64,000 nucleotides of DNA. It comes from Chrysemys picta bellii. Its lineage: Eukaryota. Of this stretch, positions 105 to 38,629 are shown in pieces. The translations under genes were made by a program, and so were the position numbers. Each line of letters opens with the position of its first letter. Position 1 is the first letter of the stretch. The notes beneath the pieces are model-generated. The model saw nothing but the letters and a program-made list of their open reading frames with translations, was not told where the DNA came from and searched no databases. Where the stretch lies: contig NC_088807.1 in assembly GCF_011386835.1 (NCBI RefSeq), positions 18,910,001 to 18,974,000 on the forward strand. The letters run 5' to 3'.

Positions 105-11706
<11,602 letters not shown>

Positions 11707-20114: not shown

Positions 20115-23100
20115 ATGGCGCTCTTGGCTCCCCTCGTGCTGGGGGCCTGGCTGGCGGCGGGCGCCGGGGGCTGCCTGCAGTGCGACCGGCAGATCCGCAG
20201 CACCCTGGAATCGCTCCGCACCGGCCTGGTGCCCCGGCAGATCCGCGACAGCCGCCTGCGGGCACGGGCCCAGGCCCTGCTGCGCGGCATGGAGGGCGGG
20301 TTCTTCCGCCACTACGCCACCAGCCAGTTCGCGGGCACGGCCGGTAGGGGGCACGGCCCAGGGACCTCTGGGGGGGCACGACTGGGGGTATCCAGCGGGC
20401 ATGGCCTGAGGACAATGCATGGGGGGGGAGCCATAGGGCAAAGGGATGAGGTATGAATCCACCAACACTCCACTGTCCCCTCTGTACCCAACCCCCTCCC
20501 CCCCACACACTGCCCTGGCAGTCAGGGCTGGCCCCAGGGCAGCGCTAGGGGGCGCTGTGCTGCAGGGGGCGGGATGTGGGGTGGGCGCCACAGTCCACCT
20601 GGGGCCGATGTTTTCTCCCCCTCCCAGCTCTGAGCAGCATCAACGCCCTGATCCACCGCGTGAGGCTGACGGCAGCCGGCCTGGAACGAAGCGCCCTAAC
20701 AGGTGACAGCCCCACAGTCCTGCACCCCCAGTGCCCCCCAGTGCCCCCAGCATTCCACAGTCCTGTGCCCCACAGTGCCCCCAGCACCCCACAGCGCCAC
20801 CAGTGCCCCACAGTCCTGCACCCCCAGTGCCACCAGCGCCCCCTGCGCCCCCCCAGTCCTGCACCCCCCAGTGCCACCAGCACCCCACAGCACCACCAGC
20901 GCCCCCCAGTCCCACACCCCACAGCACCACCAGCACCCCAGTGTCCCCCAGTCCTGTGCTCCACAGTGCCCCCAGCACCCCACAGCATCCCCCAGTCCCA
21001 CACCCCACAGCTCCCCCAGCATCCCACAGCACCAGCAGGGCCCCATGGTCCTGCGCCCCACAGTCCTGCACCCCACGGTACCCCACAGCCCCAAGCCCCA
21101 CAGCCCTCCCCCCTCCACCGGAGTCACTTCCCCATCTGTCCCCAGACCAGGCCCTGCTGGACGCGCTGGTCGCTTTCAGGCGCAGAACGACCATGGAGCT
21201 GAAATCGGCTCTGAAGGAACATCAGGCAAAAGGTACCAGCTCCCGGGGTGGGGGTGGGGGGGCTGCCCCTCTGCCCTGGGCCCCTTCCTCCAAACCCCCC
21301 AATCCCCCAGTTCTGGGGGGCCCTTCAGTCACAGTCTGGGGCTACAATCGGTTTTTCTCTCTCTCTCCCCAGCTTGTAACCCCAAAACCTGTGGTAAGTT
21401 GACTTTCCATCGCTGCTCGGGGAATGGGGCAGGGGGCCTGTCCCCCTAGGGGGCGCCGGCCCCGATCTGGCCCGGGGGGAGGAACTGGCTGGTTCGGGGT
21501 CAAGGAATGGGGCGGGGGGGGGCTGGCTGGGGGCCTCACACTTTCCCCCTTCCCAGGCTGGCTCTACTATGACGTCTTCGACTGCACCAGTTGCAGGAAG
21601 GCGAAAGCCGTGTGTCTGAAGCAGCACCACTGCCTTGGTAGGGGGGAGTTGGGGGGCAGGGGGTGGGGGGCAGGGAGAGGTTGGGGGCCATGGGCAGATG
21701 AGCACGATGTCCAGCGAGGCTGTGGGGTGCAGGGTCGGGGGAGGGTATGGGGGCTCCAGGAGGGCCGTGGGGCAGGGAGGGGCATGGAGCTGATGCCCGG
21801 GGGATATCACTGACCCCAGCCCCCCACGTGGGGGAGGGGGAGGGGAGGGGAGGGGGGCAGACAGCAGGTGTGGGGGGTACCCAGGAGGGGCCTTCAGCTC
21901 TGTCAGCTCCTAACCTCCCTCCCCAACACAGTGGACTCCCAGGCCCGGCTCTCCCTGCGGTACCGGCCCCCGGCCCCTGGCCCGGCCATCGCCCGGACCG
22001 GCGTCTCTGTGGTGCTGTGCATGGGTGCCCTGCTCTTCCTGGCGCTGAGCGTCGCGTGAGTGTGAGGAACCCGCGCCCCCCAGAGCCGGCCGCATCCCCA
22101 CACCCCCCAGAGCTGGCCGCATCCTCCGTGTCCCGTCCCCCCCCCCGAGCTGGCGGCATCCCCTGAGACCCCCTCCCAGAGCCAGCTGCATCCCCCGAGA
22201 CCCCCCCAGAGCCACCCTCCCCCGAGCTGCCCGCATCCCCTGAGACCCCCCAGAGCCAGCCGCATCCCCCGTGCCCCCCAGAGCCAGTTGCATCCCTTCA
22301 GACCCCCCAGAGCCGGCTGCATCCCCCGCGCCCCCCAGAGCCAGCTGCATTCCCTGAGACACCCCCCCCAGAGCCGCTGCATCCCCCGCACCCCCCCAGA
22401 GTTGGCCACATCCTCTGTACCCCCGAGAGCCGGCCTCATCCCCCGCGCCCCCCAGAGCTGGCCGCATCCTCCGTGTCCCCCCCCCCGAGCTGGCTGCATC
22501 CCCTAAGACCCCCTCCCAGAGCCAGCTGCATCCCCCGAGACCCCCCAGAGCCACCCTCCCCCGAGCTGCCCGCATCCCCCGTTCCCCCAGAGCCAGTTGC
22601 ATCCCTTCAGACCCCCCAGAGCCAGCTGCATCCCCCGCGCCCCCCAGAGCCGGCCGCATCCCCCACGCCCCCCAGAGCCAGTTGCATCCCATGAGACCCC
22701 CCAGAGCCGTATTCTCTGAGACCCCCCCAGAGCTGGCCGCATCCCCTGAGACCCCCCAGAGCCGGCCGCATCCCCTGAAACCCCCCTGGGCTGGCTGCAT
22801 CCCCTGAGACCCCCCAGAGCCGGCCGCATCCCCCGCGCCCCCCAGAGCCGGCTGCATCCTCCATGCCCCCCCCCCCGGGCTGGCTGCATCCCCTGAGACC
22901 CCCCAGAGCCGGCCACACCCCCTGAGACCCCCCAGAGCCGGCCGCATCCCCTGAAACCCCCCCGAGCCAGCTGCATCCCCTGAGACTCCCCAGAGCCAGC
23001 CACGTCCCCTGAGACCCACCTGAAACTCCCCAGAACCGGCTGCATCCCCAATGGCCCCCCAGAGCCGGCTGCATCCCCCGCACCCCCCCAGAGCCACCTA

Positions 23101-23343
23101 CATTCCCCTCCCCCCAGAGCCAGCTGCATCCCCCGCACCCCCCCCAGAGCCACCTACATTCCCCTCCCCCCAGAGCCGGCTGCATCCCCCGCACCACCCC
23201 CAGAGCCGGCTGCATCCCCTGAGACCCCCAGAACAGCTCCATCCCCCGCAAGCGAGCGATCGCTGTCCAGGCCAGTCTGACTCTGTCTCTCGCCCCCCAG
23301 GGCCGTCACCTACTGGAGGAACCAGCAGTCCCTGAGGCAGTAG
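20115..23343 (+). CDS. IZUMO2: Izumo sperm-egg fusion protein 2 (219 aa; signal peptide, 8-Cys Izumo domain, TM)
   Basis: Exons 20115-20343, 20628-20702, 21146-21232, 21373-21393, 21557-21637, 21932-22055, 23301-23343, all GT-AG and in frame. GCLQCD...LLRGMEGGFFRHYA...ACNPKTC...VFDCTSC...VDSQARLSLRY...TYWRN matches recalled human IZUMO2 motifs. Kozak caccATGg; an in-frame upstream ATG at 20100; ATTAAA at 23495-23500. Confidence 0.9.
20705..21110. repeat. C-rich degenerate VNTR in IZUMO2 intron 2
   Basis: ccccacagtcctg / cccccagtgcc units. Confidence 0.8.
22070..23250. repeat. Long CCCCAGAGCCGGCTGCATCCCC VNTR in IZUMO2 intron 6
   Basis: Dozens of ~25-30-bp degenerate units; source of the long Gly-rich spurious ORFs. 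Confidence 0.9.
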
Positions 23344-23785: not shown

Positions 23786-26700
23786 CTAACACGCCAGCCA
23801 CCTGCCCTGTCCGGCCCAGGCCCTGTCCTCCAGCCACCTGCGGTGTCGGCAGCACACGCAGTACCTAGGGGAGAGCGGCTGTCAGGGTCTGCCCCCTGCC
23901 CTCACCCCCGGACTCCTGGGGTCTCTCCCTGGCTCTGGGAGGGGAGTGGGGTCTAGTGGGTAGAGCAGGGGGCTGGGAGCCAGGACTCCTGGGTTCTCTC
24001 CCTGGCTCTGGGAGGGGAGTGGGGTCTAGTGGGTAGAGCAGGGGGGTGCTGGGAGCCAGGACTCCTGGGTTCTATCCCTGGCTCTGGGAGGGCTGTTCAG
24101 ATTCTCACTGAGTGCTGGGTGGGGTCACCCCACTTTCAGTATCTGCGATGAGCCCAGAGGGGTAGAGGTCCCCAGAATCTGCCTCAGTTAGGGGTGATCC
24201 GAGGTTTTTGGGTGCATGGGGGCGGGGATGCCGTGAAGATGAAGGGGGAAAATATGGGTGTTGGGCATCAGAGGTAGGGAACGTGGGGTACCCAGGGCAG
24301 CCCCCCATCCTGAGCCACTCTATCCCAGCAGGGCACTCACAGCAGGGCGGCCGAGGCCAGCAGCACGGACTGGCAGACCAGGAAGAGATAGAGGGTGATT
24401 TCCTTCCTCTCCGCATCCCGCGGGTCCTCCTCTGGGGACAGAAAGGGGGTGAGCCCCAAGCCCCCCCCACAGCCCCCCACACCTCCACCCCACTGACCAG
24501 CAGACCCCTGGTTCCCCCCAGTACCCCACACCCCCTGCCACCCCCCAGGCTCCCATTCACCCCACTGTCCCCCAACCCCCAGTACCCCACACCCCCTGCT
24601 AACCCCGTTCACCCCACTACCCATCAGCTCCCCTGTCCTCCCCACCCCCATCTGCCCCCCACTGCCCAGCCCCCCACCCCAACCCCACGGCAGCAGCTAC
24701 CTCCGCAGAGCTCCCCGTCGAAGCACTGGGCATTGATGCGAAGGCAGGTCCAGCAGTCGAGAACTGGTCCCTCTGTAACCGCTGGGATGTGGAAAGGGGG
24801 GACCAGGTCAGGGACCCACGGGGAGACCCCGCCGTGCCCTGCAGGGGGTGCCAGCTCCCACCTGACCCCAGGGAGCAGGGAATGGGGCAGGGGGCCTTTC
24901 CCCTCAAGGGGGCGCCAGCTCCCACCCGGCCCCAGGGCAGGGACTGGTTGGCTCAGGGAGCAGGGAACGGGGCACGGGGCCTATCCCCTCCAGGGGGCGC
25001 TGGCAGGGGACTGTGGGTAGGCACCAGGGGGCCACACTCACTGCAGTCCTCGGAGCAGGCTGTGGGGGAAGCACAGACAGACACAGCGTTAGAGACCCTC
25101 TCTCATGGGGCACTCCTTGCCCCCCACGTCCCTCAGAGCCCCCCACCGCCCGCCCATCACCCAGAGGGCCCTACCCTGATCTCAGGGACGCTGGACCCAG
25201 ATCTCCCCGCTCCGCCCCCAATGCTGCTTGCGTCTCATGCGGCTGGAGATGGGGGGGTCCCTGGCTGTCGCATGGGGGGTGGGAGGGTGTCACGGAGTAT
25301 TGGGGAACTCAGGGCCCTGCACCCCCGGCTTCCTGCGATTCACCATGACTCTCAGCCAGCCAGTAAAGCAGAAGGTTTATTTGGATGACAGGAATACAGT
25401 CCAAGACAGGTCTTGCAGGCACAGACAACAGGGCCCCCCTCAGTTAGGTCCAGCTTGGGGTCCCAGGGCATTCCAGCCCAGCCCCCCTTGGGAGGTCAGA
25501 GCCATCTCTGCCTCCCAGCCATCTCTCCAGCCTCCTTCCAGCCTGCTTCCAGCACTCTGCCTTCAGCGACCCCTCCCACAGCCTTTGTTCAGTTTCCCGG
25601 GCCCCGGAGTCATCTGACCTCCAACCCCCTCCTGGGTTCTCATGTTACAAGCTCAGGTATGTTCCCTTGGGCCGGCTCCCATCCCCCGATGCAGACCATC
25701 CTAGTCACACTCCCCTGTCAGCATTCACACACCCCAGCAAGAACAGTCCCAGTTCGTCACATCTCTCCCCCCTTCGAGACCGAACTGAGCAGGGTCACTT
25801 TAGCCAGTGACCCGGGGAAGTTCGAACCTACCCCCGTTCCCATGGATGCCCCCGCATCCCTCCAGTTCCTTGGTGAGAATTACACCAGGCCCCTTCCGTT
25901 CCACGCCCCCCCTTAGGTCGGGGGTGCTTGATGGCACTCGCAGTTCGCATGTGGGAAGGTTTATGCGGCCTGTGCCCTTTCCCCACCCCCATACCTCTGG
26001 GGTTCCAACTGGGCTGTGGTCTTCTCCCAGCGCTCCAGTCTGGAGGTCTGTGCTTTGGGCTCTCTTGGTTTAGAGCCGCCCTTTTAACCTTGGCCACCCT
26101 CTGGAAAGGATCCTTTATGCTGGGCAAGGGTCCTAAAGCTCTTTTCCCCTTGTCCCAGGCCTTCCTCCCCCTCTGACAGGGGTCACAGGATCCGCAGTAC
26201 TGTCGGACAGTAACAAAGACCCCAGGCCAGTAAAAGCTCCGTAGCAGCCTCTGCTGGGTACGCCAGGTTCCCTGGTGCCCTGAGAGGGGAATGTCATGGG
26301 CCCGGCACAGCAGCTGGCGGCGATACTTCTGGGGTACCACCAGCTGCCTCCTGATCCCCCCTGACTCCATTTTCCCTGGGGGAGCCCATTCTCGGTACAG
26401 GAACCCCTTCTCCCACAGGAACCTTTTCCGGCCACCTCGTCCCATGGTCTGTACCGCATTGAGGTCGGCCAGGTCCCTTATCTTCCGCAAGGAGGGATCT
26501 CTCTGTAACTCGGCCTGGAACTCAGCAGCTGGGACAGGGATGGCCACCTGCTCTTTCTCGCCCGCTGGGTCCGAAGCTGCAGCCTCCCTGCGCCGTGTCC
26601 CTGGGCGTTCCCTCCCCACCAGGTTAGGGTCCTGCGCCTCAGGCAAGGCACCCCCCCCAAGGCCAGGGCGCAGTGCCCCTCGCCGGCTCTGACTGCGGGT

Positions 26701-29700
26701 CACAACTAAGGCGGTCTGGGGGCTGCTTGGCCAGTCCTCTAGGTCCCCCCCCATCAACACCTCAGTGGGCAAATGGTGGTGCACTCCCACGTCCTTGGGG
26801 CCCTCCTTGGCCCCCCATTTCAGGTGTACCCTCGCTACGGGAACCTTGAATGGGGTCCCGCCCACCCCGGTCAGGGTCAGGAAGGTGTTGGGCACCACCC
26901 GATCTGGGGCCACCACCTCGGGCCGGGCCAGTGTCACCTCTGCGCCCGTGTCCCAGTATCCATAAACTTTCTTCCCATCCACCTCCAGGGGAACAAGGCA
27001 CTCGCTCCGCAGGGACAGCCCCGCGCCAACCCTGTAAACGGAGAACTTTGAATCCGGAGCATCTGGCCCCCCAGAGAAGCTGGCCTGGGGCCCTTCTCTC
27101 TCTTGAGCAGTTGATAAGCTGCCAGCCCCTCTTGCGTTAGAAGCCTGCCCCTCGTCCGTCTGGGCCTCTACCAAGTTAACCCGGTGCGGGTTCGGTCTGC
27201 TCAGTCTGTCCTTGAGCTTGGGGCACTGGGCCCGAACGTGGCCTCTTCGGCCGCAGTAATAGCAGCTCAGGTCCCGTGGGTCCCCTCGAGCCGGTCGGTT
27301 GTCCCTGACGCTGGGCATTCCCCGTGGGAGGGGATTCCCCATATTCCCCCTTTGGGAGGTCCCAGGGTGACTCTCTCTCTGCATCGCGGCGGGCCTGTTC
27401 CTTTGGGGCTCCTCCCTGCCACCCCCTGACCGGCTCTTTACAAACTCATCAGCCAGCTGCCCGGCGTGTCGCGGGTTCTCTGGCTTTCTGTCCACCAACC
27501 ACAGCCTCAGGTCGGATGGGCACCGCTCATACAGTTGCTCCAGTACCAGCAGTTTAATCAGGTCCTCCTTCGTCTGGGCCCCACCAGCCCACTTGCTGGC
27601 GTATCTTTCCATGCGGGCGGCTAGTTGCAGATATGAGATCTCAGGGGTTTTATCCTGACTCCGGAACCTTTCCCGGTACATCTCAGGAGTCAGCCCAAAC
27701 TCTCGTAGCAGGGCCTTTTTGAATAGTTCGTAGTCCCCTTTCTCTGCCTCTCCCAGTTGGCGGTACAATGCCACGGATTTGGGGTCCAGTAAGGGGGTAA
27801 GGACCCGGAGTCTGTCCGCGGGATCCACCCGGTGCAGCTCGCAGGCCGTCTCAAAGGCCTCCAGGAAGTCATCCATGTCCTCCCCCTCCTTGTATGGGGC
27901 CATGATGCACTTATCAAAGCCCCGTGCAGTCCTGGGTCCCCCCTCACTCACCGCAGCCGGGGGTTCGCTGCCCTTCAATCTCGCCAGTTCCAGGTCATGC
28001 TGACGCTGTCTCTCATTCTCCTGTCTCTGTCTCTCTTTTTCCTCCCGTTCACGCTGATGCTGTCTCTCATTCTCCTCCCGTTCATGCTGTCTCTGTCTCT
28101 CTTCACGCTGATGCTGTCTCTCTTTCTCCTCCCGTTCACGCTGATGCTGTCTCTCATTCTCCTCCCGTTCATGCTGTCTCTGTTGTTCACGATCCTCCAG
28201 CTCCCTCAGTTTTAGCTCTTTCTCCCATTCCAGCCAATTCCGCTCCCCGGATGCCGAACGTCGCCGGGAGGATCCTCTGCTGGCCGGCGAGCTTCGCCGG
28301 GGGGACCCCCTGCTGGCCGGGGGGGTCACGGCGCCTTCGGTATTTGCTGGGCTCCTCCCCACCCTTCCCCTAGGCATAGGAAGGAGGGGTCTCGGGAAGC
28401 CCTCAGCAGCGGGCTGACCACTCCCAGCTGGGACAGACACTGGTGCCTGCGCTGCATTTGCCAGGCTGCTTCCCTGAGACACAGGGATCAGTTCATTCGC
28501 GCGATCTTCCGCCTCCAGCTGGGCAATGAGCTGTTCTTTGGTGAGCCTCCCAATGCGCAGCCGCCTCTGCTTGCACAGCTCCACCAGGTCGCTCTTAAGC
28601 CGCTTGGCATACATCTTCCTGCTGGCCACTCACCGGCCTGTGTGCTCACAGCTCCCCACAGTTCCCAGGGGGCCCCCTAGTGTGCCAGCCCTTCTCGAGG
28701 TCACCGCCTCTCCGCCAGGGTCGAGCTGCAGACTCCTCCGCCCCTGGGACCACTCGCTGCGATCCCCCCGGGGGACCCTGTTACTGCAAAAGTCCTTCTC
28801 GCTGGTCACACACTCCCAGGGGTAATAACCGTCTCTCTCCCACTCTTCAGCAGGCCTGGTTCCCGTCCATCCCCCTTCGTTTTACTGCTCCCCAGTCACT
28901 TACTGCAGGAAGCGCCGTCCACGGGGTGCAGTAGATCCCACCGCTGCCACCAGTTGTCACGGAGTATTGGGGAACTCAGGGCCCTGCACCCCCGGCTTCC
29001 TGCGATTCACCATGACTCTCAGCCAGCCAGTAAAGCAGAAGGTTTATTTGGATGACAGGAATACAGTCCAAGACAGGTCTTGCAGGCACAGACAACAGGG
29101 CCCCCCTCAGTTAGGTCCAGCTTGGGGTCCCAGGGCATGCCAGCCCACCCCCTTGGGGGGTCAGAGCCATCTCTGCCTCCCAGCCATCTCTCCAGCCTCC
29201 TTCCAGCCTGCTTCCAGCACTCTGCCTTCAGCGACCCCTCCCACAGCCTTTGTTCAGTTTCCCGGGCCCCGGAGTCATCTGACCTCCAACCCCCTCCTGG
29301 GTTCTCATGTTACAAGCTCAGGTATGTTCCCTTGGGCCGGCTCCCATCCCCCGATGCAGACCATCCTAGTCACACTCCCCTGTCAGCATTCACACACCCC
29401 AGCAAGAACAGTCCCAGTTCGTCACAGAGGGGTGTGGGGGGAGCCCCCCATCTCCGGGGGCACGTACCCAAGTCGGCGAAGCTCTCCATGGCCTCTCGGA
29501 GGCGGGTTCGCAGGGAGTCGCGGTGCTGGGCCAGCGTCAGCTGCAGCAGGTGAACCCCTGGGGGACAGGCAGACATTGCTGGGGGGCAGCCGGCCCCACG
29601 CGCACCTGGCACCCCTCCCCCAATGCCAGCCGAGATGCCGGGCACCTGTCATGTGGTCCACACCCCCTTCCGGAGACCCACAGCCCCACTCCCGCCCCCC

Positions 29701-30447
29701 ACCTCCCAGCCACTGCCGGCTCCTGCCCAGCATCCCTGCCCCCCGGGAACTCCAGCCCTGCCCCCCCCAGCCTGGGCCACTCTCAGCCCCGCCAGATCCA
29801 CCCCCCCACACACACACACACCTTTCCAAGGCGTCTCCTTGAGAGCCCTCAGCCAGCTGCTCAGAGCAGTTTTCACAGCCAGCATCCCGCGGACATCTGT
29901 ACAGGGAACCAAGGGGTCAAAGGGGGCACCCTCTGCCCCCCAGCAGCTGTGCCAGTGCTCCTCACTCCCGACCCGCAGCCCCTGCCAGCCCAGCCCTGGG
30001 CTCCCCCCATAGCTCTGCCGCTGCCCCTCACTCCCGACCCACAGCCCCCTGCTAGCCCGGCCCTTTCCCCCCACCCCAGCCCTGCCGGTGCCCCTCACTC
30101 CCGACCCGCAGCCCCTGCTAGCCCGGCCCTGGGCTCCCTGCTACCCAGCTTTGCCAGTGCCCCTCACTCCCAACCCGAAGCCCCCTGCTGTCCCAGCCCA
30201 GGTGCCCCCGGGGGAGGGGCCGCACACCCAGCACCCGGTGGTGTTTCTCTGGCAGGTGGGTGCTGTAGAGGCGCTCAAAGGCCTGGACCTGGCGTTGAAT
30301 TAGGGCATCCCGGTTGGGCACTTCAGAGGGCACCGCCTCCCCCAGCAGCACCCCCAGCCCCCGCAGGAAGGGCCGGTCGCAGTGCAGGCAGCCGCCCGCC
30401 CCCCGGGGGCGCAGCAGCAGCAGGAGGAGCAGGAGAGAGCAGGACAT
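23786..30447 (-). CDS. IZUMO3: Izumo sperm-egg fusion protein 3 (217 aa; signal peptide, Izumo domain, TM)
   Basis: Exons 30447-30228, 29896-29822, 29557-29468, 25059-25042, 24781-24701, 24431-24341, 23864-23786. GCLHCD...[11 protein letters not shown]...[37 protein letters not shown] match recalled human IZUMO3 ([33 protein letters not shown]). AATAAA on minus at 23688-23693. The last exon is less certain. Confidence 0.88.
25288..25761 (-). mobile_element. 3' LTR (474 bp), preceded by polypurine tract AAGGGGGGAGAGA (25774-25762)
   Basis: By eye it differs from the 5' LTR only by ~2 substitutions and a 2-bp indel, all in one ~25-bp patch. Confidence 0.95.
25828..28629 (-). CDS. 933-aa retrotransposon polyprotein: SAP/HeH-like N-terminus, coiled-coil repeats, SCAN-like capsid, CCHC knuckle, aspartic protease, integrase H2C2 zinc finger; no integrase core, RT or RNase H
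   Basis: Motifs [19 protein letters not shown]; [17 protein letters not shown]; [14 protein letters not shown]; WDTGAEVTL; [24 protein letters not shown]. Confidence 0.9.
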   Translation of the reverse strand: MASRKMYAKRLKSDLVELCKQRRLRIGRLTKEQLIAQLEAEDRANELIPVSQGSSLANAAQAPVSVPAGSGQPAAEGFPRPLLPMPRGRVGRSPANTEGAVTPPASRGSPRRSSPASRGSSRRRSASGERNWLEWEKELKLRELEDREQQRQHEREENERQHQREREEKERQHQREERQRQHEREENERQHQREREEKERQRQENERQRQHDLELARLKGSEPPAAVSEGGPRTARGFDKCIMAPYKEGEDMDDFLEAFETACELHRVDPADRLRVLTPLLDPKSVALYRQLGEAEKGDYELFKKALLREFGLTPEMYRERFRSQDKTPEISYLQLAARMERYASKWAGGAQTKEDLIKLLVLEQLYERCPSDLRLWLVDRKPENPRHAGQLADEFVKSRSGGGREEPQRNRPAAMQRESHPGTSQRGNMGNPLPRGMPSVRDNRPARGDPRDLSCYYCGRRGHVRAQCPKLKDRLSRPNPHRVNLVEAQTDEGQASNARGAGSLSTAQEREGPQASFSGGPDAPDSKFSVYRVGAGLSLRSECLVPLEVDGKKVYGYWDTGAEVTLARPEVVAPDRVVPNTFLTLTGVGGTPFKVPVARVHLKWGAKEGPKDVGVHHHLPTEVLMGGDLEDWPSSPQTALVVTRSQSRRGALRPGLGGGALPEAQDPNLVGRERPGTRRREAAASDPAGEKEQVAIPVPAAEFQAELQRDPSLRKIRDLADLNAVQTMGRGGRKRFLWEKGFLYREWAPPGKMESGGIRRQLVVPQKYRRQLLCRAHDIPLSGHQGTWRTQQRLLRSFYWPGVFVTVRQYCGSCDPCQRGRKAWDKGKRALGPLPSIKDPFQRVAKVKRAALNQESPKHRPPDWSAGRRPQPSWNPRGMGVGKGHRPHKPSHMRTASAIKHPRPKGGRGTEGAWCNSHQGTGGMRGHPWERG
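28935..28952 (-). other. Primer-binding site complementary to the 3' end of tRNA-Leu (AAG/TAG type)
   Basis: Plus strand ATCCCACCGCTGCCACCA equals the recalled 3'-terminal 18 nt (with CCA) of vertebrate tRNA-Leu-AAG/TAG, 2 nt from the 5' LTR. Confidence 0.85.
28955..29426 (-). mobile_element. 5' LTR (472 bp)
   Basis: Direct repeat of 25288-25761. AATAAA on minus near 29042-29047. Confidence 0.95.
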
Positions 30448-30669
30448 GGCCACAGATCCCCGGCCCCGCTGTGACCTCATCGGCCTGGTGACATCACAGA
30501 GCCAGAGGGGCAGAGTGTTCCCTGGGCGGGGAGGAAATGACATCATAGGCAGAAGAGTGGGTTAGAAGGTGTTGGCTGCAACACAAGAAATGATGTCACA
30601 AACAGAACTGGGGTCTAATGAGAGGAGTGGGTGTAGAACAGGAAGTGATGTCAGAGGCAGAAGAGGCAG

Positions 30670-31333
30670 TGTGACAAAGTGGGAATGTTCTTAATGTTTT
30701 CTCTGAATACTGTGTGGGTGCCTCAGTTTCCCCTATGCATTTCTTAACTATCTAGGGTGGTGGGAGAAGGGGGTGTGGTTGTTGCAGAGCCCTAGAGGGC
30801 CAGTGCGATGGTGTCTGCACAGAGAATGGCCAACACCCTGTCTCCTGGCAACTGATGGCCTGGGGCCCTCCCCTGCAAGTGCCAACTGAAGGTGTTGGAG
30901 AACAAAGAGATCAGGTGACCTCCTGGCCCGGGAAAGAGCCGAGGGGCTGGAGAGTTTCAGTTTGAGCTGGCTGGGGAAAGAGAGGCCTCAAGATGGACCT
31001 GACTTAGGGGTCCAGTTTCTGTACCTACAAGCTCTGTTTTGGACCGTGTTCCTCTCGTCTAATAAACCTTCTGTTTTAGTGGCTGGCTGAGAGTCACGTC
31101 TGACTGCGGAGTCGGGGGGCAGGGCCCTCTGGCTTCCCCAGGACCCCGCCTGGGTGGACTCGCTGTGGGAAGCGCACGGGGGGACGGGGATGCTGAATGC
31201 TCCGGGGTCAGACCCAGGAAGGTGGAAGCTGTGGAGGCTTCTTGCCCTGGAGACAGTCGGCTCCGAGAGAGGAGGCTCCCCCGAGTCCTGCCTGGCTTCA
31301 TATGGAGCAAGTCCAGAGCCTCGCCCGGGGACA
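30670..31333 (+). mobile_element. Solo LTR of a related Gypsy family
   Basis: Starts TGTGACA, ends ...GGGGACA. Contains AATAAACCTTCTGTTTTAGTGGCTGGCTGAGAGTCAC, similar to the LTR above. Imperfect 5-bp flanks GGCAG/GGCGG. Confidence 0.7.
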
Positions 31334-31619
31334 GGCGGCTAAAAGAAGAAGTGGCGGCACAACAAGAGATGATGTCAGAAGCAGAACAGGCATCTAGTGG
31401 GAGGAGCGGATGTAGAACAGGAAGTGATGTCAGGGGCAGAAGTTAGGGCTAAAGAAGAATTGAAGGCAATCAGGAACTGATGTCGAAGGCAGAATGGGAG
31501 GTGATGTTCGCAGCAGAAGAGGGGCTTAGAAAGGATTGGAGACAGAACAGGAAGTGATGTCAGAAGCAGGAAAGGGGCCCAGAGGTGGACTGAGGCAGAA
31601 TGGGAAGTGATGCAGGATT

Positions 31620-32037
31620 GCCAACCCTTGACCTTGATCTCCATCCCCCTGCACCAGGCGATGCCCTGTTCCCGCGGGCAGAGTCCCCTGGGTCCCAGCC
31701 GTGGCCCTGGGGCAGCAGGAGGAAGGGCCGGTTTGAGACACAAACCAGTTCTAGGGAGCTGGCTGGAGAACTTCATTCGAATTCTCATGCGCTCATCAAC
31801 TCATGGATGGTGGTGATGGGCTCGTTTCTGGGTGTGGGTCCCGAGTGAAACCTGTTGAGTTAAACTGCCTGTTGAAACACTTCGCGAGCAATTATTGAAT
31901 ATATTGAATATAACAACAGTAGCAGTGAAGGTTTGTTGAAAGTGAAGGGGAAAGTGCAGCCATTGAACGTGTCGGGGGAAACTGAGGCACACACGGGCTT
32001 AGTACAAATATTACAGAAAATCCCCCCCTTTGTCACA
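31620..32037 (-). mobile_element. LTR-like fragment, inverted relative to 30670-31333
   Basis: The minus strand from 32037 reads TGTGACAAAG...GTGTGCCTCAGTTTCCCC, resembling the start of the solo LTR. Left boundary uncertain. Confidence 0.5.
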
Positions 32038-32280
32038 GGAGATCTGAGGAAAACTGGGATGTGATGTCAGCGGCAGAAGAGGAAGTGATGTCAGACGTAG
32101 AAGAAGGGGCTAAAGAAGAATTGAGGCACAAGAAGAAGTGATGTCAGTGGCGGAATAGGAAGTGATGTCAGAAGTGGCACAGACCTTTATGGCAGGACTG
32201 GAGGCAGAACAGGAAGTGATGTCAGAGGCAGGAAGGATTAGAAGAGAACAGGAAGTGAGGTCATAGTGGTTGCCGGGGCG

Positions 32281-35200
32281 ATGCTGGTGCTGGTGGTGTT
32301 GGTGCTGCCCCTGCTGGCCCCGGGCGCCGCCCCCTGCCTGCGCTGCTGGCCGGACGCCCCCCGCTACGTCCACTACGACGTGCGGCTGCTGCTGGGGGCA
32401 GCGCAGCCCGGGGGGGCCGCGTGGCTGGAGAGGGAGCTGAGTGCGCTCATCTTGGGGGGGGACCACGGCGTCCACCTCATGGGTGAGGGGTGGGGCATGG
32501 GGCCCCCCACAAACACCCCCCTGGCCCACCTGTCACAGCACCCCCTGCCCTGCCCCCCATGGCGTCCCCCACTGAGACCCCTCCCACCAACTCCCTCCTG
32601 GTGACCCCTGCTGAGCCCCCCGATTCCCCCATAACAGCTTCTGACGAGCCCCCCCCACTCCCTGCTCCCATAGCTCCCCCCTCCCCACAGCCCAGCGCCC
32701 CCTGCTGACCCCCTGCCCCCCTCCCCGCAGCCCAGCGCCCCCTGCTGACCCCCGACCCCCGCCTCCTCCCTGCAGCCCAGCGCCCCCTGCTGAGCCCACA
32801 GCCCCACAGCCCAGCGCCCCCTGCTGACCCCCTGCCCCACCCCCTGCAGCCCAGCACCCCCTGCTGAGCCCCCGACCCTGCTCCCTGCAGCCCAGCGCCC
32901 CCTGCTGAGCCCCCCGCCCCACCCCCTGCAGCCCAGCACCCCCTGCTGAGCCCACAGCCCCACAGCCCACAGCCCAGTGCCCCCTGCTGACTCCCTGCCC
33001 CCCTCCTTGCAGCCCAGCGCCCCCTGCTGACCCCCTGCCCCCCTCCCCGAAACCCAGCGCCCCCTGCTGACCCCCTGCTCCCCTCCCCGCAGCCCAGCGC
33101 CCCCGCTAAGCCCTCGACCCTGCTCCCTGCATCCCAGCGCCCCCTGCTGACCCCCTGACCCCTGCCTCCTCCCTGCAGCCCAGTACCCCCTGCTGACCCC
33201 CTGCCCCCCTCCCCGCAGCCCAGCGCCCCCACTAAGCCCCCGACCTTGCTCCCTGCAGCCCAGCGCCCCCTGCTGACCCCCTGACCCCCGCCTCCTCCCT
33301 GTAGCCCAGCGCCCCCTGCTGAGCCCCCCCACCCCACCCCCTACAGCCCAGCGCCCCCTGCTGAGCCCACAGCCCCGCGCCCCCTGCTGATTCCCTGCCC
33401 CCCTCCTTGCAGCCCAGCGCCCCCTGCCAAGCCCCTGCCCCGCTCCCCGCAGCACAGCACCTCCTTGAGTCAGGACGAGGGGCATGGTGGGTGCTGCAGG
33501 CGCTGACGGGCAGCAAACCTCACCTCTGTCCGTCTGTCCGGCCGCAGAACGGGAGCGCCTGGAGCGAGAAGCCGGGAAGCTCTTCTATCGCCTGGACCAG
33601 ATCATCAACCGCAACCGGCAGGGTGAGCGCCAGGGGCCCAGCCCCAACTCCGCCTGCCCTGTCTGCCCCGCGCGGAGGGAGCAGCAAACCCCATGATGGA
33701 TCAGGGCTTGCCTTTCCCTCCCAGAGCCAGGGAGAGGACCCAGGAGTCCGGGCTACCAGCCCCCCCACCCTGCTCCCGTAACTAAGGGATGACAAGAAGT
33801 TGGGACTTTTTCCCCTTTTGACCTGAGCCATTAGCCGAAATTCACGGTCTTGTGGCCCGTTGCCAATCAGAGGAGAAATCGAGCCCTAGATTCTAAGGCC
33901 AGTGGGGATGGTCTGATCGTCTGGCCGGACCCGTCCCCCCCGCTAGCACAGGCCAGCACCCTGCCCCCAACCCCCTCACGCTGAGCCCAGCGGCCTGGGT
34001 TAGACCGAACCGGGGCTGGAGGTGCAGCCAGGTACCTTTGGGACGATCCCCTTTTGTCAGTCGCATCCTGGCCCCCTTGCAACTCGAGCACCAGCCGGGG
34101 AGGGAGAAGGGCCCTTGGCCCCCGAACACCGCAGGAGACGGGCCCTTTGCTCACAATCCCGCGCCTCCTCCCACGCAGCCCCGTGCCCAAAAGCTCTCCC
34201 GGGCGGTTTGTTCTCTCATGCGCCGGGGTTTCCATCGGGGTCTTCATCGCCATCTTCGCCCACGTCTCTCTCCCCCTCCCCTAATGTATGACCCTGTCCA
34301 GCCCCGGCAGTGGCCACGGGGCAGACCCCACCGTTGGGACGGGGTGGGGATGTTCCCATCGCTGGAGGGATTCCACCTCCCTGTGGGACATCGCCGGACG
34401 CCGTCTCCTACCCGCGTCTACCCCAGGGGCTAGGTTGGCCCAGCCCCGGCACACACAGGGGGTGGGGGGAGCGACATCACCTTGAGTTTTAACCATGGCC
34501 CGTGCTCCAGTGGCCTCGTATGGGCGGGTCAGCTCCGGGCCGAGCACGGCGCTTCCTTCCCAGCTGTGCGCGGGGGCCGGGCATGGCCCAAATAAGGCGT
34601 GCGACACCCAGCGCCCTCCACCCCCAACTCCTCCCCTGCCCCGCTCCCCACAGCCAACGCCCCTCCCCCACTTCTGCCCCGCAGATCCAGTGCGCCTGAT
34701 GAAAGAGGCAGCGCTTGAAAAGCAGAACTTCACCCAGCGCCTGAGAGCAGCATCGGCAGCCGTCCGGCAGCAAGGTACCCGCCATGCCCGCCTGCTGCCC
34801 GAGCTGGTGCCCCTCACTCCCGACCCGCAGCCCCTGCCAGCCCAGCCCTGGGCTCCCCCAGCTCTGCCAGTGCCCCTCACTCCCGATCTGCAGCCCCTGC
34901 TAGCCCAGCCCTGGAATCTGCCCCCCCAGTCTCTGCCGGTGCCCCTCACTCCCGACCCGCAGCCCCTGCTAGCCCAGCCCTGCCCCCCCCAGCTCTGCCG
35001 GTGCCCCTCACTCCCGATCTGCAGCCCCTGCTAGCCCAGCCCTGGAATCTGCCCCCCCAATCTCTGCCGGTGCCCCTCATTCCCAACCCGCAGCCCCTGC
35101 CAGCCCAGCCCTGGGCTTCCCCAGCTCTGCCAATGCCCCTCACTCCTGACTTGCAGCCCCTGCCAGCCCAACCCTGCCACCCCCCAGCTCTGCCGGTGCC

Positions 35201-36936
35201 CCTCACTCCCAACCCGCAGCCCCTGCTAGCCCAGCCCTGCCCCCCCCAGCTCTGCCGGTGCCCCTCACTCCCAACCCACAGTTAGCCCAGCCCCGGGCTC
35301 TGCCCCTGCACCCAGCTCTGCCAGTGCCCCTCACTCCTGGGTTCTCTTCCCACTCTGGGGGGGGCAGGGAGCCCGGATTCCTGGGTTCCATCCTGGCTGG
35401 GGGGGGCAGAAGGCTTGCGGGGAGCTGGATTAGGGGCCGGGGCCGTTCTGCCTGCGCTGATCCGTGTCTCTCTCCCCACAGTGTGCAGCGCGTCCTGTGG
35501 TGAGTCCGTCTGTCCATCCGGCTGCCTCCCGGGGGGTGGGGGGCTGCAGCCCCCGCAACACGAACCTACCGCTCGCGCCCTGGGCCGGCCCCCAAGTGGG
35601 GCCGTATCCACCCCCGCAACGCTGCCCCCTGGGGAGGGGCCCCCAGGAATGTGCGGGGCTGGGACGGCTCCCCTGGGGGTGTTTCTCTAATGGGGTCCCC
35701 CCCAACAGGCCGGTCCGAGCCCTTCGATTTGTCCGAGTGCGACAGCTGTGAACGCCTCCAAGCTCGATGCAGGGACCAGAGGGTCTGCGCAGGTAACCCC
35801 TGACACCCCCCAAGCCCCAACACTCCTCCACACCCCCGAACTCCAACACCCCCAGCCACCGAACCCCGACACCCCCAGCCCCCCAAACTCTGACACCCCT
35901 CCACCCCCCTGCACCCCCCATTGGCCACCAAACCCCTCACAGCAGCTCCCCCGAATCCCAGCATCCTCCACAGCCCCCTGAACTCCCCCAACCCTTTTTC
36001 CAGTCTTCCCCCCACCCCCCATTCACCCTCTAGTACCCCCCATGGCCTCTTCTAGTTCCATCTCCCTCCAGCCCCCAAACCTCAGCACCCCCCTGAACTC
36101 TCCCCATCACCCTCCCAAACCATTCATCCCCCTCCACGACCCCCCAACCCACAGCCCCCTTCCCGCCCCACACCCAGCCCAGCCCCCTAACTTCTGCCCC
36201 CTCTCTCCCCCCAGGCGCTGCCGTGATCCTGGCTGTGGGGCTGACCCTGGGGGGGCTGGTGCTGGGAGCCGCAGTGGGGTGAGTGGGGATCAGACAGAGG
36301 CGGGCGGCAGAGAGGGAAGTGGGACCCAGGCGTCCTTGAGAAGAGAATGGAGATGGGCCCCGATCCAACTCTAGGGCTGGGGGCTGGCTGGGAGGGAGAG
36401 GGATGGGGAATGCGGCCACTCCCATCTAGGGGGCACTGGTTCCGGTCTGGAGCGGTGGGGCCTGGCTGGCTGCGGGAGTGGGATGGAGCCACTCCTCTAG
36501 GGGGCACTGGCTCTGGGCAGGGGCGGAGGGGGCGTGGGGTTGACTGGGAGGCACCAGCCTGAGACCCCGGCCCGGGGACAGGGCCTTCCTTTGTTATAGG
36601 CGGCGAGCAAGGCCGGCGGCAGGCAGGACGGAGCCCCCCGCGGACCTGGGGAATGGGGCCCCCGCGGAGCAAGGGGCCGGGGCCCCCACGGAGCTGGGGA
36701 ATGGGGCTCCCGCGGAGCAAGGGGCCGGGGCCCCCCACGGAGCTGGGGAATGGGGCCCCCGCGGAGCAAGGGGCCGGGACCCCCACAGACATGGGGAATG
36801 GGGCCCCTGCAGAGCAAGGGGCCGGGACCCCCACAGACATGGGGAATGGGGCCCCCGCGGAGCAAGGGGCCGGGACCGTGACTCATTAAATGTTGGTGTC
36901 TTTTCCCATCCCGGCTTTTCTGGAGAATGTGACTGA
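32281..36936 (+). CDS. Unassigned IZUMO-family single-pass membrane protein (signal peptide, 8-Cys Izumo domain, no Ig domain, TM, repeat-rich cytoplasmic tail)
   Basis: Exons 32281-32482, 33548-33622, 34685-34774, 35482-35499, 35709-35792, 36215-36278, 36600-stop, all GT-AG. Cys pattern CLRC / CSASC / CDSC / C / C; sizes and phases match IZUMO2/3. Stop is 36936 as assembled, or 36889 if one C in the C6 run at 36731-36736 is removed. Confidence 0.85.
32680..33430. repeat. CAGCCCAGCGCCCCCTGCTGA VNTR in intron 1 of the IZUMO paralogue
   Basis: Many degenerate units. Confidence 0.9.
34805..35340. repeat. GTGCCCCTCACTCCCGACCCGCAGCCCCTGCTAGCCCAGCCCTG tandem repeat (dispersed family)
   Basis: About 8 units; the same family appears at ~29960-30200, ~14090-14190, ~12480-12560. 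Confidence 0.85.
36643..36880 (+). repeat. Coding 48-bp repeat x5 ((D/E)(L/M)GNGAPAEQGAG(A/T)PT) in the last exon of the IZUMO paralogue
   Basis: Five units visible; the second is 49 bp. Confidence 0.85.
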
Positions 36937-36959
36937 ACTGCTCCCCCAACCAAAATCCC

Positions 36960-37340
36960 CAGGTGACGGGCCCCTCTACCCCGGAATCCCGTCTCCCCCA
37001 GCCCCACGGGCCCCTCTACCCCGCCTCCCTCCAGCCCCACGGGCCGCTGTATCCCGGTATCCCACCTCCCCTGGCCCCCTGTACCCTGCCTCCCCCAGCC
37101 CCACGGGCCCCTCTACCCTGGTATCTCGCCTCCCCACGGGCTCCTCTACCCTGGTACCCTGCCTCCCCACGGGCCCCTCTCCCCTGGTATCCAGCGTCCC
37201 TATACCCCAGTATCCCACCTCCCCCAGCATCTCACCCTCCCCCAGCCCCACAACCCGACGGGCCCTTCTACCTCGGTATCCCACCTCCCTCAGCCCCACG
37301 GGTCCCTCTCCCCTGGTATCCTGCCTCCCACAACCCCATG
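36960..37340. repeat. CCCCACGGGCCCCTCTACCC degenerate VNTR between the paralogue and the EPN1 3' end
   Basis: Repeated motif. Confidence 0.75.
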
Positions 37341-38629
37341 GGCCCCTCTACCCCAGTATCCCGCTCCCCTTGATATCACACCCCTGCTGGCAAACACCCT
37401 CCCTGACTGCAGGGCTCACCCTGAAACCCAGCCATTACATAAGATTAATTAAGACCCTCCCCCAGCTGACCCCCCCAGCCTCTCCCTCCCCCACATACTC
37501 ATATCTCATGCCCCCCCCCCCCCCGAGCAGCCGCCCACAGACGCCCCATTGGTGCCTTAGAAGAATCTCACTTTATTATTAATTCATTTTAGCACATTCT
37601 GCATACACGGGGGGGGGGGGGGGGGGGGGGACACAAACGGGGGGGCAGAAATCAGATGGGGGACCCCTCCCCCCAGCAGAGGGTCAGGCTTAAGGATCAG
37701 CCCCCACCCCACTGCAGTTGATTGGTGAAGGGGGTGGGGGGCACAACTAGGAGAATTCATACACAGGTTGTGATTGGGGGGAAATCGGGGGGGCATTATG
37801 GGACCCTCCCCTCCAGTGGGGGGTTGAGTCTGTGGGGTGGGGAGCCAGGTTCACGACATCACAGCCACTCACGCGAGCCCCCTGCCCCCCCGGAGGGCAG
37901 GGATCATGCTGCGGGGGGGGGGGGGGGGGGGAAATCAGGGATTACGACCACACGGCCAGCAGGGGGTGCTGTCGATGCGGCACATCCTGGGCAGGGACAG
38001 GGGGGCATGTGCGGCTCAGAACTGCCCCCCCCACACACTTCAGTCCACAGGCCGGCAGCAGAGCCCCGGCGGGGTCCAGTCCTAGGTTTATCCTACTGCC
38101 GGCCTGGCTGGCCCTGCTCCGTGAGCTTTTTTGGGGGGTGGGGGGGTGATTAAGGCAGCCCCCCCCCGACTGCAAATCCCTCAGGGGGGGGGTGTCCAGT
38201 GGCCCCGCCCAGGTGGCTCCAAAGGAGATGCTGGCGTGGGGGAGGTGTCATGGCAGCCATCACTGCCTCCCCCCAGCAGCAGGGCCCCCGCATGTCCCGG
38301 GGGGGGGGGGGGGGCAGCTATAACTTAAAGGTGCAGGAGCACCCCCCACTTCCGAGAGATGGGGCAGGACTTGGAGGGGAGCTTAGGGTGAGGCATGGCC
38401 TCAATGGGGGTGGAGCTATGCAGGGAGAGGGGTTTAACACTGCCCCCACTTATGAATTCTCAGGTAACGGGGGGGTACTGCCCATGAAGGGGAGAATCTG
38501 ATGCCACACCCAGCAGCCCCTCCCACCTGCCCCCCCCATGGCATGGGCTGCCCCAGGGCTCCCTTCCCCCTCCCCCCAGCAGCCCCTTTGGGGGCTCCCC
38601 TCATGCCCCCCACCCCCGGGCCAGCCCCC

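What the first reader, a model, noticed from the sequence alone, without database searches (positions are those of the whole stretch)
32281..36936. Unassigned fifth-type IZUMO gene: Izumo four-helix domain, no Ig, TM and repeat tail
Seen: a fully spliceable 7-exon gene encoding MLVLVVLVLPLLAPGAAP-CLRCWPDAPRYVHYDVRLLLG...ERERLEREAGKLFYRLDQIINRNRQDPVRLMKEAALEKQNFTQRLRAASAAVRQQVCSASCGRSEPFDLSECDSCERLQARCRDQRVCAG-TM(AAVILAVGLTLGGLVLGAAVG)-RRAR, with 8 conserved Cys and one NFT sequon. Compared with recalled sequences it lacks the Ig domain of IZUMO1/SPACA6, has a TM unlike IZUMO4, lacks the extra Cys pair of TMEM95, and shares few diagnostic residues with the neighbouring IZUMO2/3. Its middle helices look loosely IZUMO1-like. 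Inference: a distinct family member lost in mammals or restricted to reptiles, and a candidate sperm-egg adhesion/fusion factor. No single ORF reveals it.
Basis: partly seen in the sequence, partly recalled or inferred. Interest (0 to 1): 0.8.

Follow-up and report, generated by a model that had tools for sequence, protein, structure and literature searches.

The report
Turtle TEX51, a known Izumo-fold gene
The spliced gene is real and expressed, but it is the turtle copy of TEX51, a sperm-cell membrane protein that NCBI already annotates and that a 2025 paper already placed in the Izumo/SPACA6/TMEM95 superfamily, so it is not a new family member.

Summary
The seven-exon gene at 32281-36936 (+) is real. 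All splice sites are GT..AG, and spliced RNA contigs from two turtle species confirm four junctions directly and support the rest. Two corrections apply. The main last-exon acceptor is 36582, not 36600, which adds six residues in frame. The assembly also has one extra C in a C-run at 36731-36736. Without it, the tail is five 16-residue repeats ending at TAA 36888-36890.

The protein has a signal peptide, an Izumo-like four-helix bundle, a beta-hairpin hinge, eight Cys including two CXXC motifs, a TM segment and no Ig domain. It is not unassigned. A Chrysemys picta bellii protein identical to window exons 2-6 is named "testis-expressed protein 51" by NCBI, as are its lizard and snake homologues.

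Dupuis et al. 2025 described TEX51 as a new IST-superfamily member found in mammals, lizards, snakes and turtles. Mouse knockouts point to acrosome and sperm-head formation rather than gamete fusion.

One modest addition: TEX51 lies head-to-head with IZUMO3 beside IZUMO2 and an epsin gene. This order is shared by turtle and lizard, and the three genes have the same exon plan.

I could not test orthology to mammalian TEX51 with mammalian sequences.

The parts
32281..32482 (+). Coding exon 1: signal peptide, first CXXC (CLRC), helices 1-2. RNA contigs reach upstream to at least 32255.
   Evidence: Exon-1 search found turtle orthologues.
33548..33622 (+). Exon 2 (75 nt, phase 1), start of helix 3. 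A minor alternative acceptor at 33413 was seen in one run.
34685..34774 (+). Exon 3 (90 nt), helix 4 with the NFT sequon
35482..35499 (+). Exon 4, an 18-nt micro-exon encoding VCSASC (hinge Cys 3 and 4). It is skipped in some NCBI isoform models of other turtles.
35709..35792 (+). Exon 5: beta-hairpin hinge with the second CXXC (CDSC) and two further Cys
36215..36278 (+). Exon 6: transmembrane segment
36582..36890 (+). Last coding exon from the RNA-supported acceptor 36582 (alternative 36600). It holds the end of the TM, an RRRAR stop-transfer and the repeat tail. Stop is TAA 36888-36890 in the repeat frame. As assembled, the frame shifts and runs on to TGA 36934-36936.
36635..36877 (+). 48-bp x 5 tandem repeat encoding 16-residue Gly/Ala/Pro-rich units of the cytoplasmic tail
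   Evidence: Similar repeats occur in variable number in other turtles.
36731..36736 (+). C6 run. One C is absent from a same-species RNA contig, so this is a probable assembly error or an allele that shifts the tail frame.
   Evidence: table 4
36885..36890 (+). ATTAAA, a likely poly(A) signal overlapping the stop. RNA contig depth falls to zero after about 36868.
30448..32280 (.). Shared head-to-head promoter region between the IZUMO3-like gene and TEX51. It holds 12 of the window's 13 TGATGTCA octamers (CRE-like), often as GGAAGTGATGTCA, plus TGAGGTCA next to each ATG.
   Evidence: Conserved in Mauremys, absent from Pogona.
24341..30447 (-). Neighbour B, IZUMO3-like gene. Six exons were mapped (220, 75, 90, 18, 81, 91 nt). 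The last exon was not fixed.
   Evidence: (Pfam IZUMO 27.2 bits on exon 1)
20115..23343 (+). Neighbour A, IZUMO2-like gene with seven exons (229, 75, 87, 21, 81, 124, 43 nt)
   Evidence: (Pfam IZUMO 31.2 bits on exon 1)

Best explanation
This is the turtle TEX51 gene (testis-expressed protein 51), a divergent member of the IZUMO1/SPACA6/TMEM95 (IST) superfamily with no Ig domain. It encodes a type I membrane protein. The parts, in order, are a signal peptide, a four-helix bundle tied to a beta-hairpin hinge by four predicted disulfides (CLRC...VCSASC...CDSC...C-x5-C), one TM helix, a basic stop-transfer and a low-complexity repeat tail. Shown here: the gene structure, its transcription and splicing, conservation under purifying selection, and the predicted fold. 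Inferred from mouse Tex51 work: it is made in spermatids and helps build the sperm head and acrosome and the midpiece/principal-piece junction, rather than acting as an essential sperm-egg fusion factor. It sits in a conserved reptile cluster IZUMO2 - IZUMO3 - TEX51 - epsin and shares the cluster's seven-exon plan. That fits an origin by tandem duplication within the IZUMO family.
For: Gene model and splicing. Orthologues occur in turtles, alligator, lizards and snakes, and many are named TEX51 by NCBI, including C. picta bellii P0018, which is identical to the window over exons 2-6 and its alternative first exon. The gene is intact with conserved splice sites in Mauremys, and dN/dS is 0.31. 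The ectodomain AF2 model has pLDDT 83, pTM 0.77, four helices and a hairpin. The top 18 Swiss-Prot AFDB hits are all IST members: IZUMO3 and IZUMO2 at TM 0.58-0.62, and TEX51_HUMAN with the highest identity at 25%. The top 16 PDB hits are IZUMO1, TMEM95 and SPACA6. Atlas features place it equally near IZUMO3, TEX51, TMEM95 and IZUMO2. Literature: TEX51 is an IST member found in mammals, lizards, snakes and turtles, and a second knockout paper notes its IZUMO1-like fold. Cluster and exon plan.
Against: I could not obtain any mammalian TEX51 sequence. Orthology to mammals therefore rests on NCBI naming, on the paper's PSI-BLAST statement, on Ensembl orthologues cited, and on a Foldseek hit that does not separate TEX51 (25% identity, TM 0.38) from IZUMO3 (23%, TM 0.60). 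Local synteny does not match. Human TEX51 is on chr 2 and mouse Tex51 on chr 18, whereas the reptile neighbours are IZUMO2, IZUMO3 and an EPN1-like epsin. From my own knowledge, those lie on human chr 19 and chr 9. Pfam IZUMO matches only below threshold, at 16.6-17.5 bits against a cut-off of 25. The tissue of the RNA runs is not disclosed, so testis specificity in turtle is not shown.
Confidence: 0.85

Rival explanations
1. A sauropsid-restricted fourth IZUMO-type paralogue without an Ig domain, which NCBI named TEX51 only by weak best-hit similarity and which is not orthologous to mammalian TEX51.
For: Local synteny with mammalian TEX51 is not conserved. Foldseek scores IZUMO3 and IZUMO2 above TEX51_HUMAN. 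Several turtle orthologues are still labelled 'uncharacterized'. My word-limited searches retrieved no mammalian hit.
Against: NCBI names the gene TEX51 without '-like' in many reptiles. Dupuis et al. report TEX51 in lizards, snakes and turtles. The reptile cluster's three no-Ig TM genes map one-to-one onto mammalian IZUMO2, IZUMO3 and TEX51, and A and B are already taken by IZUMO2 and IZUMO3. TEX51_HUMAN gives the highest sequence identity among IST hits. IZUMO3 has also lost synteny in mammals, yet its orthology is accepted.
Confidence: 0.12
2. A decaying or non-functional copy. The assembled tail is frameshifted, so the gene might be a pseudogene in this species.
For: The extra C at 36731-36736 shifts the tail frame in the assembly.
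Against: The shift affects only the distal cytoplasmic repeats. A same-species RNA contig lacks the extra C. All exons and splice sites are intact, spliced RNA is abundant in a sister species, dN/dS is 0.31, and the gene is intact across turtles and squamates.
Confidence: 0.03

Closest known systems
TEX51 (human A0A1B0GUA7, mouse A0A140LIV7; Dupuis et al. 2025, PMC12615630)
   Same: Signal peptide, four-helix bundle, beta-hinge, two CXXC motifs, TM, no Ig, and no extra 'disulfide 3'. The gene is compact and multi-exon: mouse has 8 exons in about 4.5 kb, the turtle gene 7 coding exons in 4.6 kb. NCBI gives this very gene the same name.
   Different: Sequence identity to the human canonical isoform is only about 25% in the Foldseek alignment. 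The turtle tail is a 16-residue repeat array. The genomic neighbourhood differs: it lies beside IZUMO3, IZUMO2 and an epsin in reptiles, versus chr 2 (human) and chr 18 (mouse). I did not test orthology with mammalian sequences.
IZUMO3
   Same: Best structural match (TM 0.58-0.60, E 1.6e-4). Same architecture, exon lengths and intron phases. It is the immediate head-to-head neighbour. The mouse knockout likewise affects the acrosome.
   Different: The window's own IZUMO3-like gene is a separate locus. It shares only 31% identity over the 55-residue hinge with this protein. It passes the Pfam IZUMO threshold on exon 1 alone, whereas this protein does not.
IZUMO2
   Same: No-Ig, TM architecture, seven exons with intron phases 1,1,1,1,1,2, and the same cluster. 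TM-score 0.60-0.62.
   Different: Similarity is confined to 22 hinge residues. The TEX51-family HMM scores it 7 bits, against 273 for this gene.
TMEM95
   Same: Four-helix bundle plus hinge plus TM without Ig. PDB 7ux0 is among the hits.
   Different: Pfam TMEM95 scores only 11.7 bits against a cut-off of 27. It lacks the extra disulfide reported for TMEM95 and SPACA6. TMEM95 is needed for fusion, whereas Tex51 knockout sperm can still fertilize.
IZUMO1
   Same: The four-helix bundle and hinge superpose on IZUMO1 crystal structures (TM 0.49-0.62). The eight-Cys pattern is the same.
   Different: It has no Ig-like domain, and there is no evidence of JUNO binding.

Membership tests
IST superfamily (IZUMO1/SPACA6/TMEM95; definition in PMC12615630) | Anti-parallel four-helix bundle | tested here: met
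   AF2 ectodomain model with pLDDT 83 and helices at 10-22, 30-42, 53-73 and 78-108. It superposes on IZUMO1 structures at TM 0.49-0.62 and on IZUMO2, IZUMO3 and IZUMO4 models. The model was built on the Mauremys orthologue, which is about 92% identical.
IST superfamily | Pair of CXXC motifs | tested here: met
   CLRC in exon 1 and CDSC in exon 5. Both are conserved in turtles and squamates.
IST superfamily | Beta-hinge after the bundle | tested here: met
   Predicted hairpin at residues 118-122 and 127-131 of the model, with pLDDT 84-88. This is a prediction only.
IST superfamily | Testis or spermatid expression | tested here: inconclusive
   Abundant spliced contigs in two runs of a related species and rare ones in the window's species. 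The tissue of the runs is not disclosed.
Pfam IZUMO domain (PF15005) | Score at or above the gathering threshold of 25 bits | tested here: not met
   16.6-17.5 bits on full-length orthologues. 7 of 16 family members match at E<1, the best at 0.0017. Single exons give nothing. The neighbouring A and B genes pass on exon 1 alone.
TEX51 orthologous group | Groups with mammalian TEX51 rather than other IST members by sequence | not testable with these tools
   No mammalian TEX51 sequence could be fetched. The three word-based searches reached only sauropsids. Indirect support comes from NCBI names, the paper's PSI-BLAST statement and the highest Foldseek identity to TEX51_HUMAN.
TEX51 orthologous group | Conserved local synteny with the mammalian locus | tested here: not met
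   The reptile neighbours are two IZUMO genes and an epsin. Human TEX51 is on chr 2 and mouse Tex51 on chr 18. The positions of the human IZUMO2, IZUMO3 and EPN1 genes come from my own knowledge, not from a tool.
TEX51 orthologous group | Architecture: signal peptide, 4HB, hinge, TM, no Ig, no extra disulfide | tested here: met
   compared with the description.
TMEM95 family (PF15203) | Pfam threshold and the extra Cys pair | tested here: not met
   11.7 bits against 27. Only eight Cys are present.
IZUMO2 / IZUMO3 orthologous groups | Being the IZUMO2 or IZUMO3 locus of this genome | tested here: not met
   Separate IZUMO2-like and IZUMO3-like genes lie at 20.1-23.3 kb and 30.4-24.3 kb. They are adjacent, as reported for reptiles. 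This gene is only distantly similar to them.

The most novel reading that the evidence does not exclude
The sauropsid gene that NCBI calls TEX51 is not the orthologue of mammalian TEX51. A milder version: it is the orthologue, and the conserved IZUMO2-IZUMO3-TEX51-epsin cluster with one shared exon plan gives the first genomic evidence that TEX51 arose by tandem duplication inside the IZUMO family and was later scattered in mammals.
Probability: 0.12. Interest if true: 0.45.

Novelty: already known. Interest (0 to 1): 0.18.

Why it matters
The finding matters little as a discovery. The gene is annotated as TEX51 in this species, and its Izumo-like fold and reptile distribution were published in 2025. 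It does show that the first-stage reader can recover a divergent, multi-exon reproductive gene from raw sequence, including an 18-nt micro-exon. The locus adds a small evolutionary point. In turtle and lizard, TEX51 lies head-to-head with IZUMO3 next to IZUMO2, and all three share exon lengths and intron phases. This supports descent of TEX51 from the IZUMO family, not just structural resemblance.

Tried and rejected
- **Pfam on single exons:** the scan found nothing.
- **PDB by sequence:** a profile search found nothing.
- **First AF2 model:** it included the signal peptide and TM, was poor (pLDDT 62) and gave no PDB match. Trimming to the ectodomain fixed this.
- **Homologue searches:** the three word-indexed searches reached turtles, alligator and squamates but never mammals. 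No family-wide tree could therefore be built.
- **Other routes to mammalian sequence:** the supplements of the TEX51 paper are not held. A macaque sperm proteome lists TEX51 but gives no peptides.
- **Atlas feature search:** exon-1 pieces of the two neighbouring genes gave no usable hit.
- **Exact look-up of the C. picta isoform:** it is not on record.
- **Earlier scan notes:** none covered this place.
- **Not done:** I did not model any complex, because I make no binding claim. I did not check the C-run with DNA reads.
Full report
**Observation**

All have AG acceptors and GT donors, and they join into an open frame. The product starts with a signal peptide and CLRC. It has helical segments, the hinge pattern C-x3-C ... 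CxxC ... C-x5-C, a hydrophobic TM and a repeat tail. No single ORF covers it.

**Transcripts**

I laid contigs of four putative RNA runs on 32200-37000.
- Two runs of a closely related species carry exon contigs at word depth of about 700-7500. They contain GT..AG junctions 32482/33548, 33622/34685, 34774/35482, 35792/36215 and 36278/36582.
- One run of the window's own species carries the same spliced forms at depth 2-4 with no mismatches.
- The micro-exon is entered by a supported junction. The contig continues well past 18 nt, but the exit junction was not among the rows printed.
- The last acceptor seen in three runs is 36582, not 36600, which adds AFLCYR in frame. A loose end in one run, and several NCBI models of other turtles, show that 36600 is used as well.
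- A minor alternative acceptor at 33413 also occurs.

**Tail**

Positions 36635-36877 are a 48-bp x 5 tandem repeat. The same-species RNA contig lacks one C (one contig, depth 4.7). Without that C, the tail is five 16-residue Gly/Ala/Pro-rich units ending ...TVTH at TAA 36888-36890, inside an ATTAAA. Other turtles' proteins end the same way. The extra C is probably an assembly error or an allele.

**Identity**

A full-library HMMER search with exon 1 found a 225-aa Chelonia mydas protein that is 76% identical over exon 1. Word-based searches from it, and from growing alignments, found homologues in turtles, Alligator, lizards and snakes. NCBI names many of these 'testis-expressed protein 51'.

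One of them is Chrysemys picta bellii isoform X2 (P0018). It is identical to the window over exons 2-6, and its alternative N-terminus is encoded at 33483-33547. The gene is therefore already annotated as TEX51 in what is very probably this genome.

**Conservation**

Across the family, the eight Cys and a core motif in helix 3 are conserved. In Mauremys every exon and splice site is intact, including the 36582-type acceptor. dN/dS against the window is 0.31, with dS 0.14.

**Fold**

Pfam IZUMO is the best family, but it stays below threshold at 16.6-17.5 bits against a cut-off of 25. A model that included the signal peptide and TM was poor. The ectodomain alone gave pLDDT 83 and pTM 0.77, with four helices and a beta-hairpin.
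- Against Swiss-Prot AFDB models, the top 18 hits are all IST members. IZUMO3 scores TM 0.58-0.60 at E 1.6e-4, and IZUMO2 scores TM 0.60-0.62. TEX51_HUMAN has the highest identity at 25%, but TM is only 0.38 against the short canonical isoform. IZUMO1, TMEM95, IZUMO4 and SPACA6 follow.
- Against the PDB, the top 16 hits are IZUMO1 chains (TM 0.49-0.62), TMEM95 7ux0 and SPACA6 7ta2.
- Atlas shape and feature searches agree.

**Literature**

Dupuis et al. 2025 (PMC12615630) found TEX51 by a structural search of the human proteome. They describe a 4HB, a beta-hinge, two CXXC motifs, a TM and no Ig. They call it the newest IST member and state that it is conserved in mammals, lizards, snakes and turtles. 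Their Tex51 knockout males are hypofertile, with loosely anchored acrosomes, cytoplasmic remnants and midpiece/principal-piece disjunction, yet the sperm can still fertilize.

An independent knockout (PMC12917576) gave normal litter sizes but head malformations in more than 80% of sperm. That paper also notes the IZUMO1-like fold. TEX51 protein appears in a macaque sperm proteome.

**Locus**

The window holds two more Izumo genes.
- Gene A (20115-23343, +) has seven exons. Exon 1 alone scores 31 bits on Pfam IZUMO.
- Gene B (30447 down to about 24.3 kb, -) scores 27 bits on exon 1 and goes from the hinge straight into a TM.
- Grayson 2015 (PMC4807442) reported that Izumo2 and Izumo3 are adjacent on reptilian contigs, which fits A and B.

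Exon lengths are 229/75/87/21/81/124/43 for A, 220/75/90/18/81/91 for B and 202/75/90/18/84/64 for TEX51. Intron phases are 1,1,1,1,1,2 in all three. The proteins are nevertheless far apart. A and B share 25% identity over 153 residues. B and TEX51 share 31% over 55 residues. A and TEX51 align over only 22 residues.

The order IZUMO(+) - IZUMO(-) - TEX51(+) - ENTH gene(-) recurs in Mauremys and in the lizard Pogona. The ENTH gene is an epsin with UIM, DPW and NPF motifs.

**Orthology caveat**

I could not obtain mammalian TEX51 sequences, so I built no tree. Human TEX51 is on chr 2 and mouse Tex51 on chr 18. From my own knowledge, human IZUMO2 and EPN1 are on chr 19 and IZUMO3 is on chr 9. Local synteny with mammals is therefore not kept.

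Three points favour orthology. The reptile cluster's three genes map one-to-one onto mammalian IZUMO2, IZUMO3 and TEX51. NCBI naming and the paper's PSI-BLAST result agree. IZUMO3 gives a precedent for orthology without synteny. I put orthology at about 0.8-0.85.

**Mechanism**

The best reading is a spermatid type I membrane protein. Its disulfide-clamped bundle and hinge face the lumen or exterior. It contributes to acrosome anchoring and sperm-head and flagellum shaping. This function is inferred from mouse and was not shown in turtle.

**Verdict**

The interpretation as a new, unassigned, reptile-restricted fusion factor does not hold, because this is TEX51 and it is already known.

Noticed in passing
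window 30448-32280, and 20026: The octamer TGATGTCA (CRE-like) occurs 13 times in the window against about 1 expected. Twelve copies lie in the 1.8-kb region between the divergent IZUMO3-like and TEX51 genes, six of them as GGAAGTGATGTCA. The thirteenth lies about 90 bp upstream of the IZUMO2-like ATG. TGAGGTCA sits next to both divergent ATGs. The array is present in Mauremys and absent from Pogona. It may be a spermatid (CREM-type) promoter array, but this is untested.
   Followed up: partly
window 25288-29426: A 4.1-kb LTR retroelement lies in intron 3 of the IZUMO3-like gene. Its 474-bp LTRs are 99-100% identical (25288-25761 and 28955-29426). An internal 933-aa ORF (25828-28629, minus strand) carries SCAN-like, zinc-knuckle and integrase H2C2 domains but gave no RT hit. 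The element is absent at the same site in Mauremys, so the insertion is recent.
   Followed up: partly
window 20115-23343 (+) and 24341-30447 (-): Complete IZUMO2-like and IZUMO3-like genes are present, with the same exon lengths and intron phases as TEX51. The last exon of the IZUMO3-like gene was not pinned down. One candidate acceptor lies near 23864.
   Followed up: partly
window ~38600-50300 (-): An epsin gene, EPN1-like by its C-terminal NPF/DPW/UIM peptides, with its ENTH exon at 49789-50292. It is the conserved downstream neighbour of TEX51 in turtle and lizard.
   Followed up: partly
window 62125-63948 (-): A long ORF with a DnaJ-like stretch and a HEPN domain, like the C-terminus of sacsin.
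   Followed up: no
window 36731-36736: A C6 homopolymer in the assembly against C5 in a same-species RNA contig. It shifts the frame of the TEX51 tail repeats.
   Followed up: partly
window 35482-35499; P0013, P0019: Some NCBI isoform models of other turtles skip the 18-nt micro-exon that carries two of the eight Cys. This would remove partners of two predicted disulfides. It is unclear whether this is real alternative splicing or an annotation artefact.
   Followed up: no
P0023 (Hemicordylus) and other squamate TEX51 tails: Squamate TEX51 has a different, longer cytoplasmic tail with several Y-E-N-I / Y-Y-N-V motifs (of pYxN type) in place of the turtle 16-residue repeats. The NFT sequon is not kept in squamates.
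   Followed up: no
window 32676-33465 and 34806-35337: Introns 1 and 3 of TEX51 are largely C-rich tandem repeats with periods of about 40/126 bp and 63/131 bp. Many unrelated RNA contigs map to these repeats.
   Followed up: no
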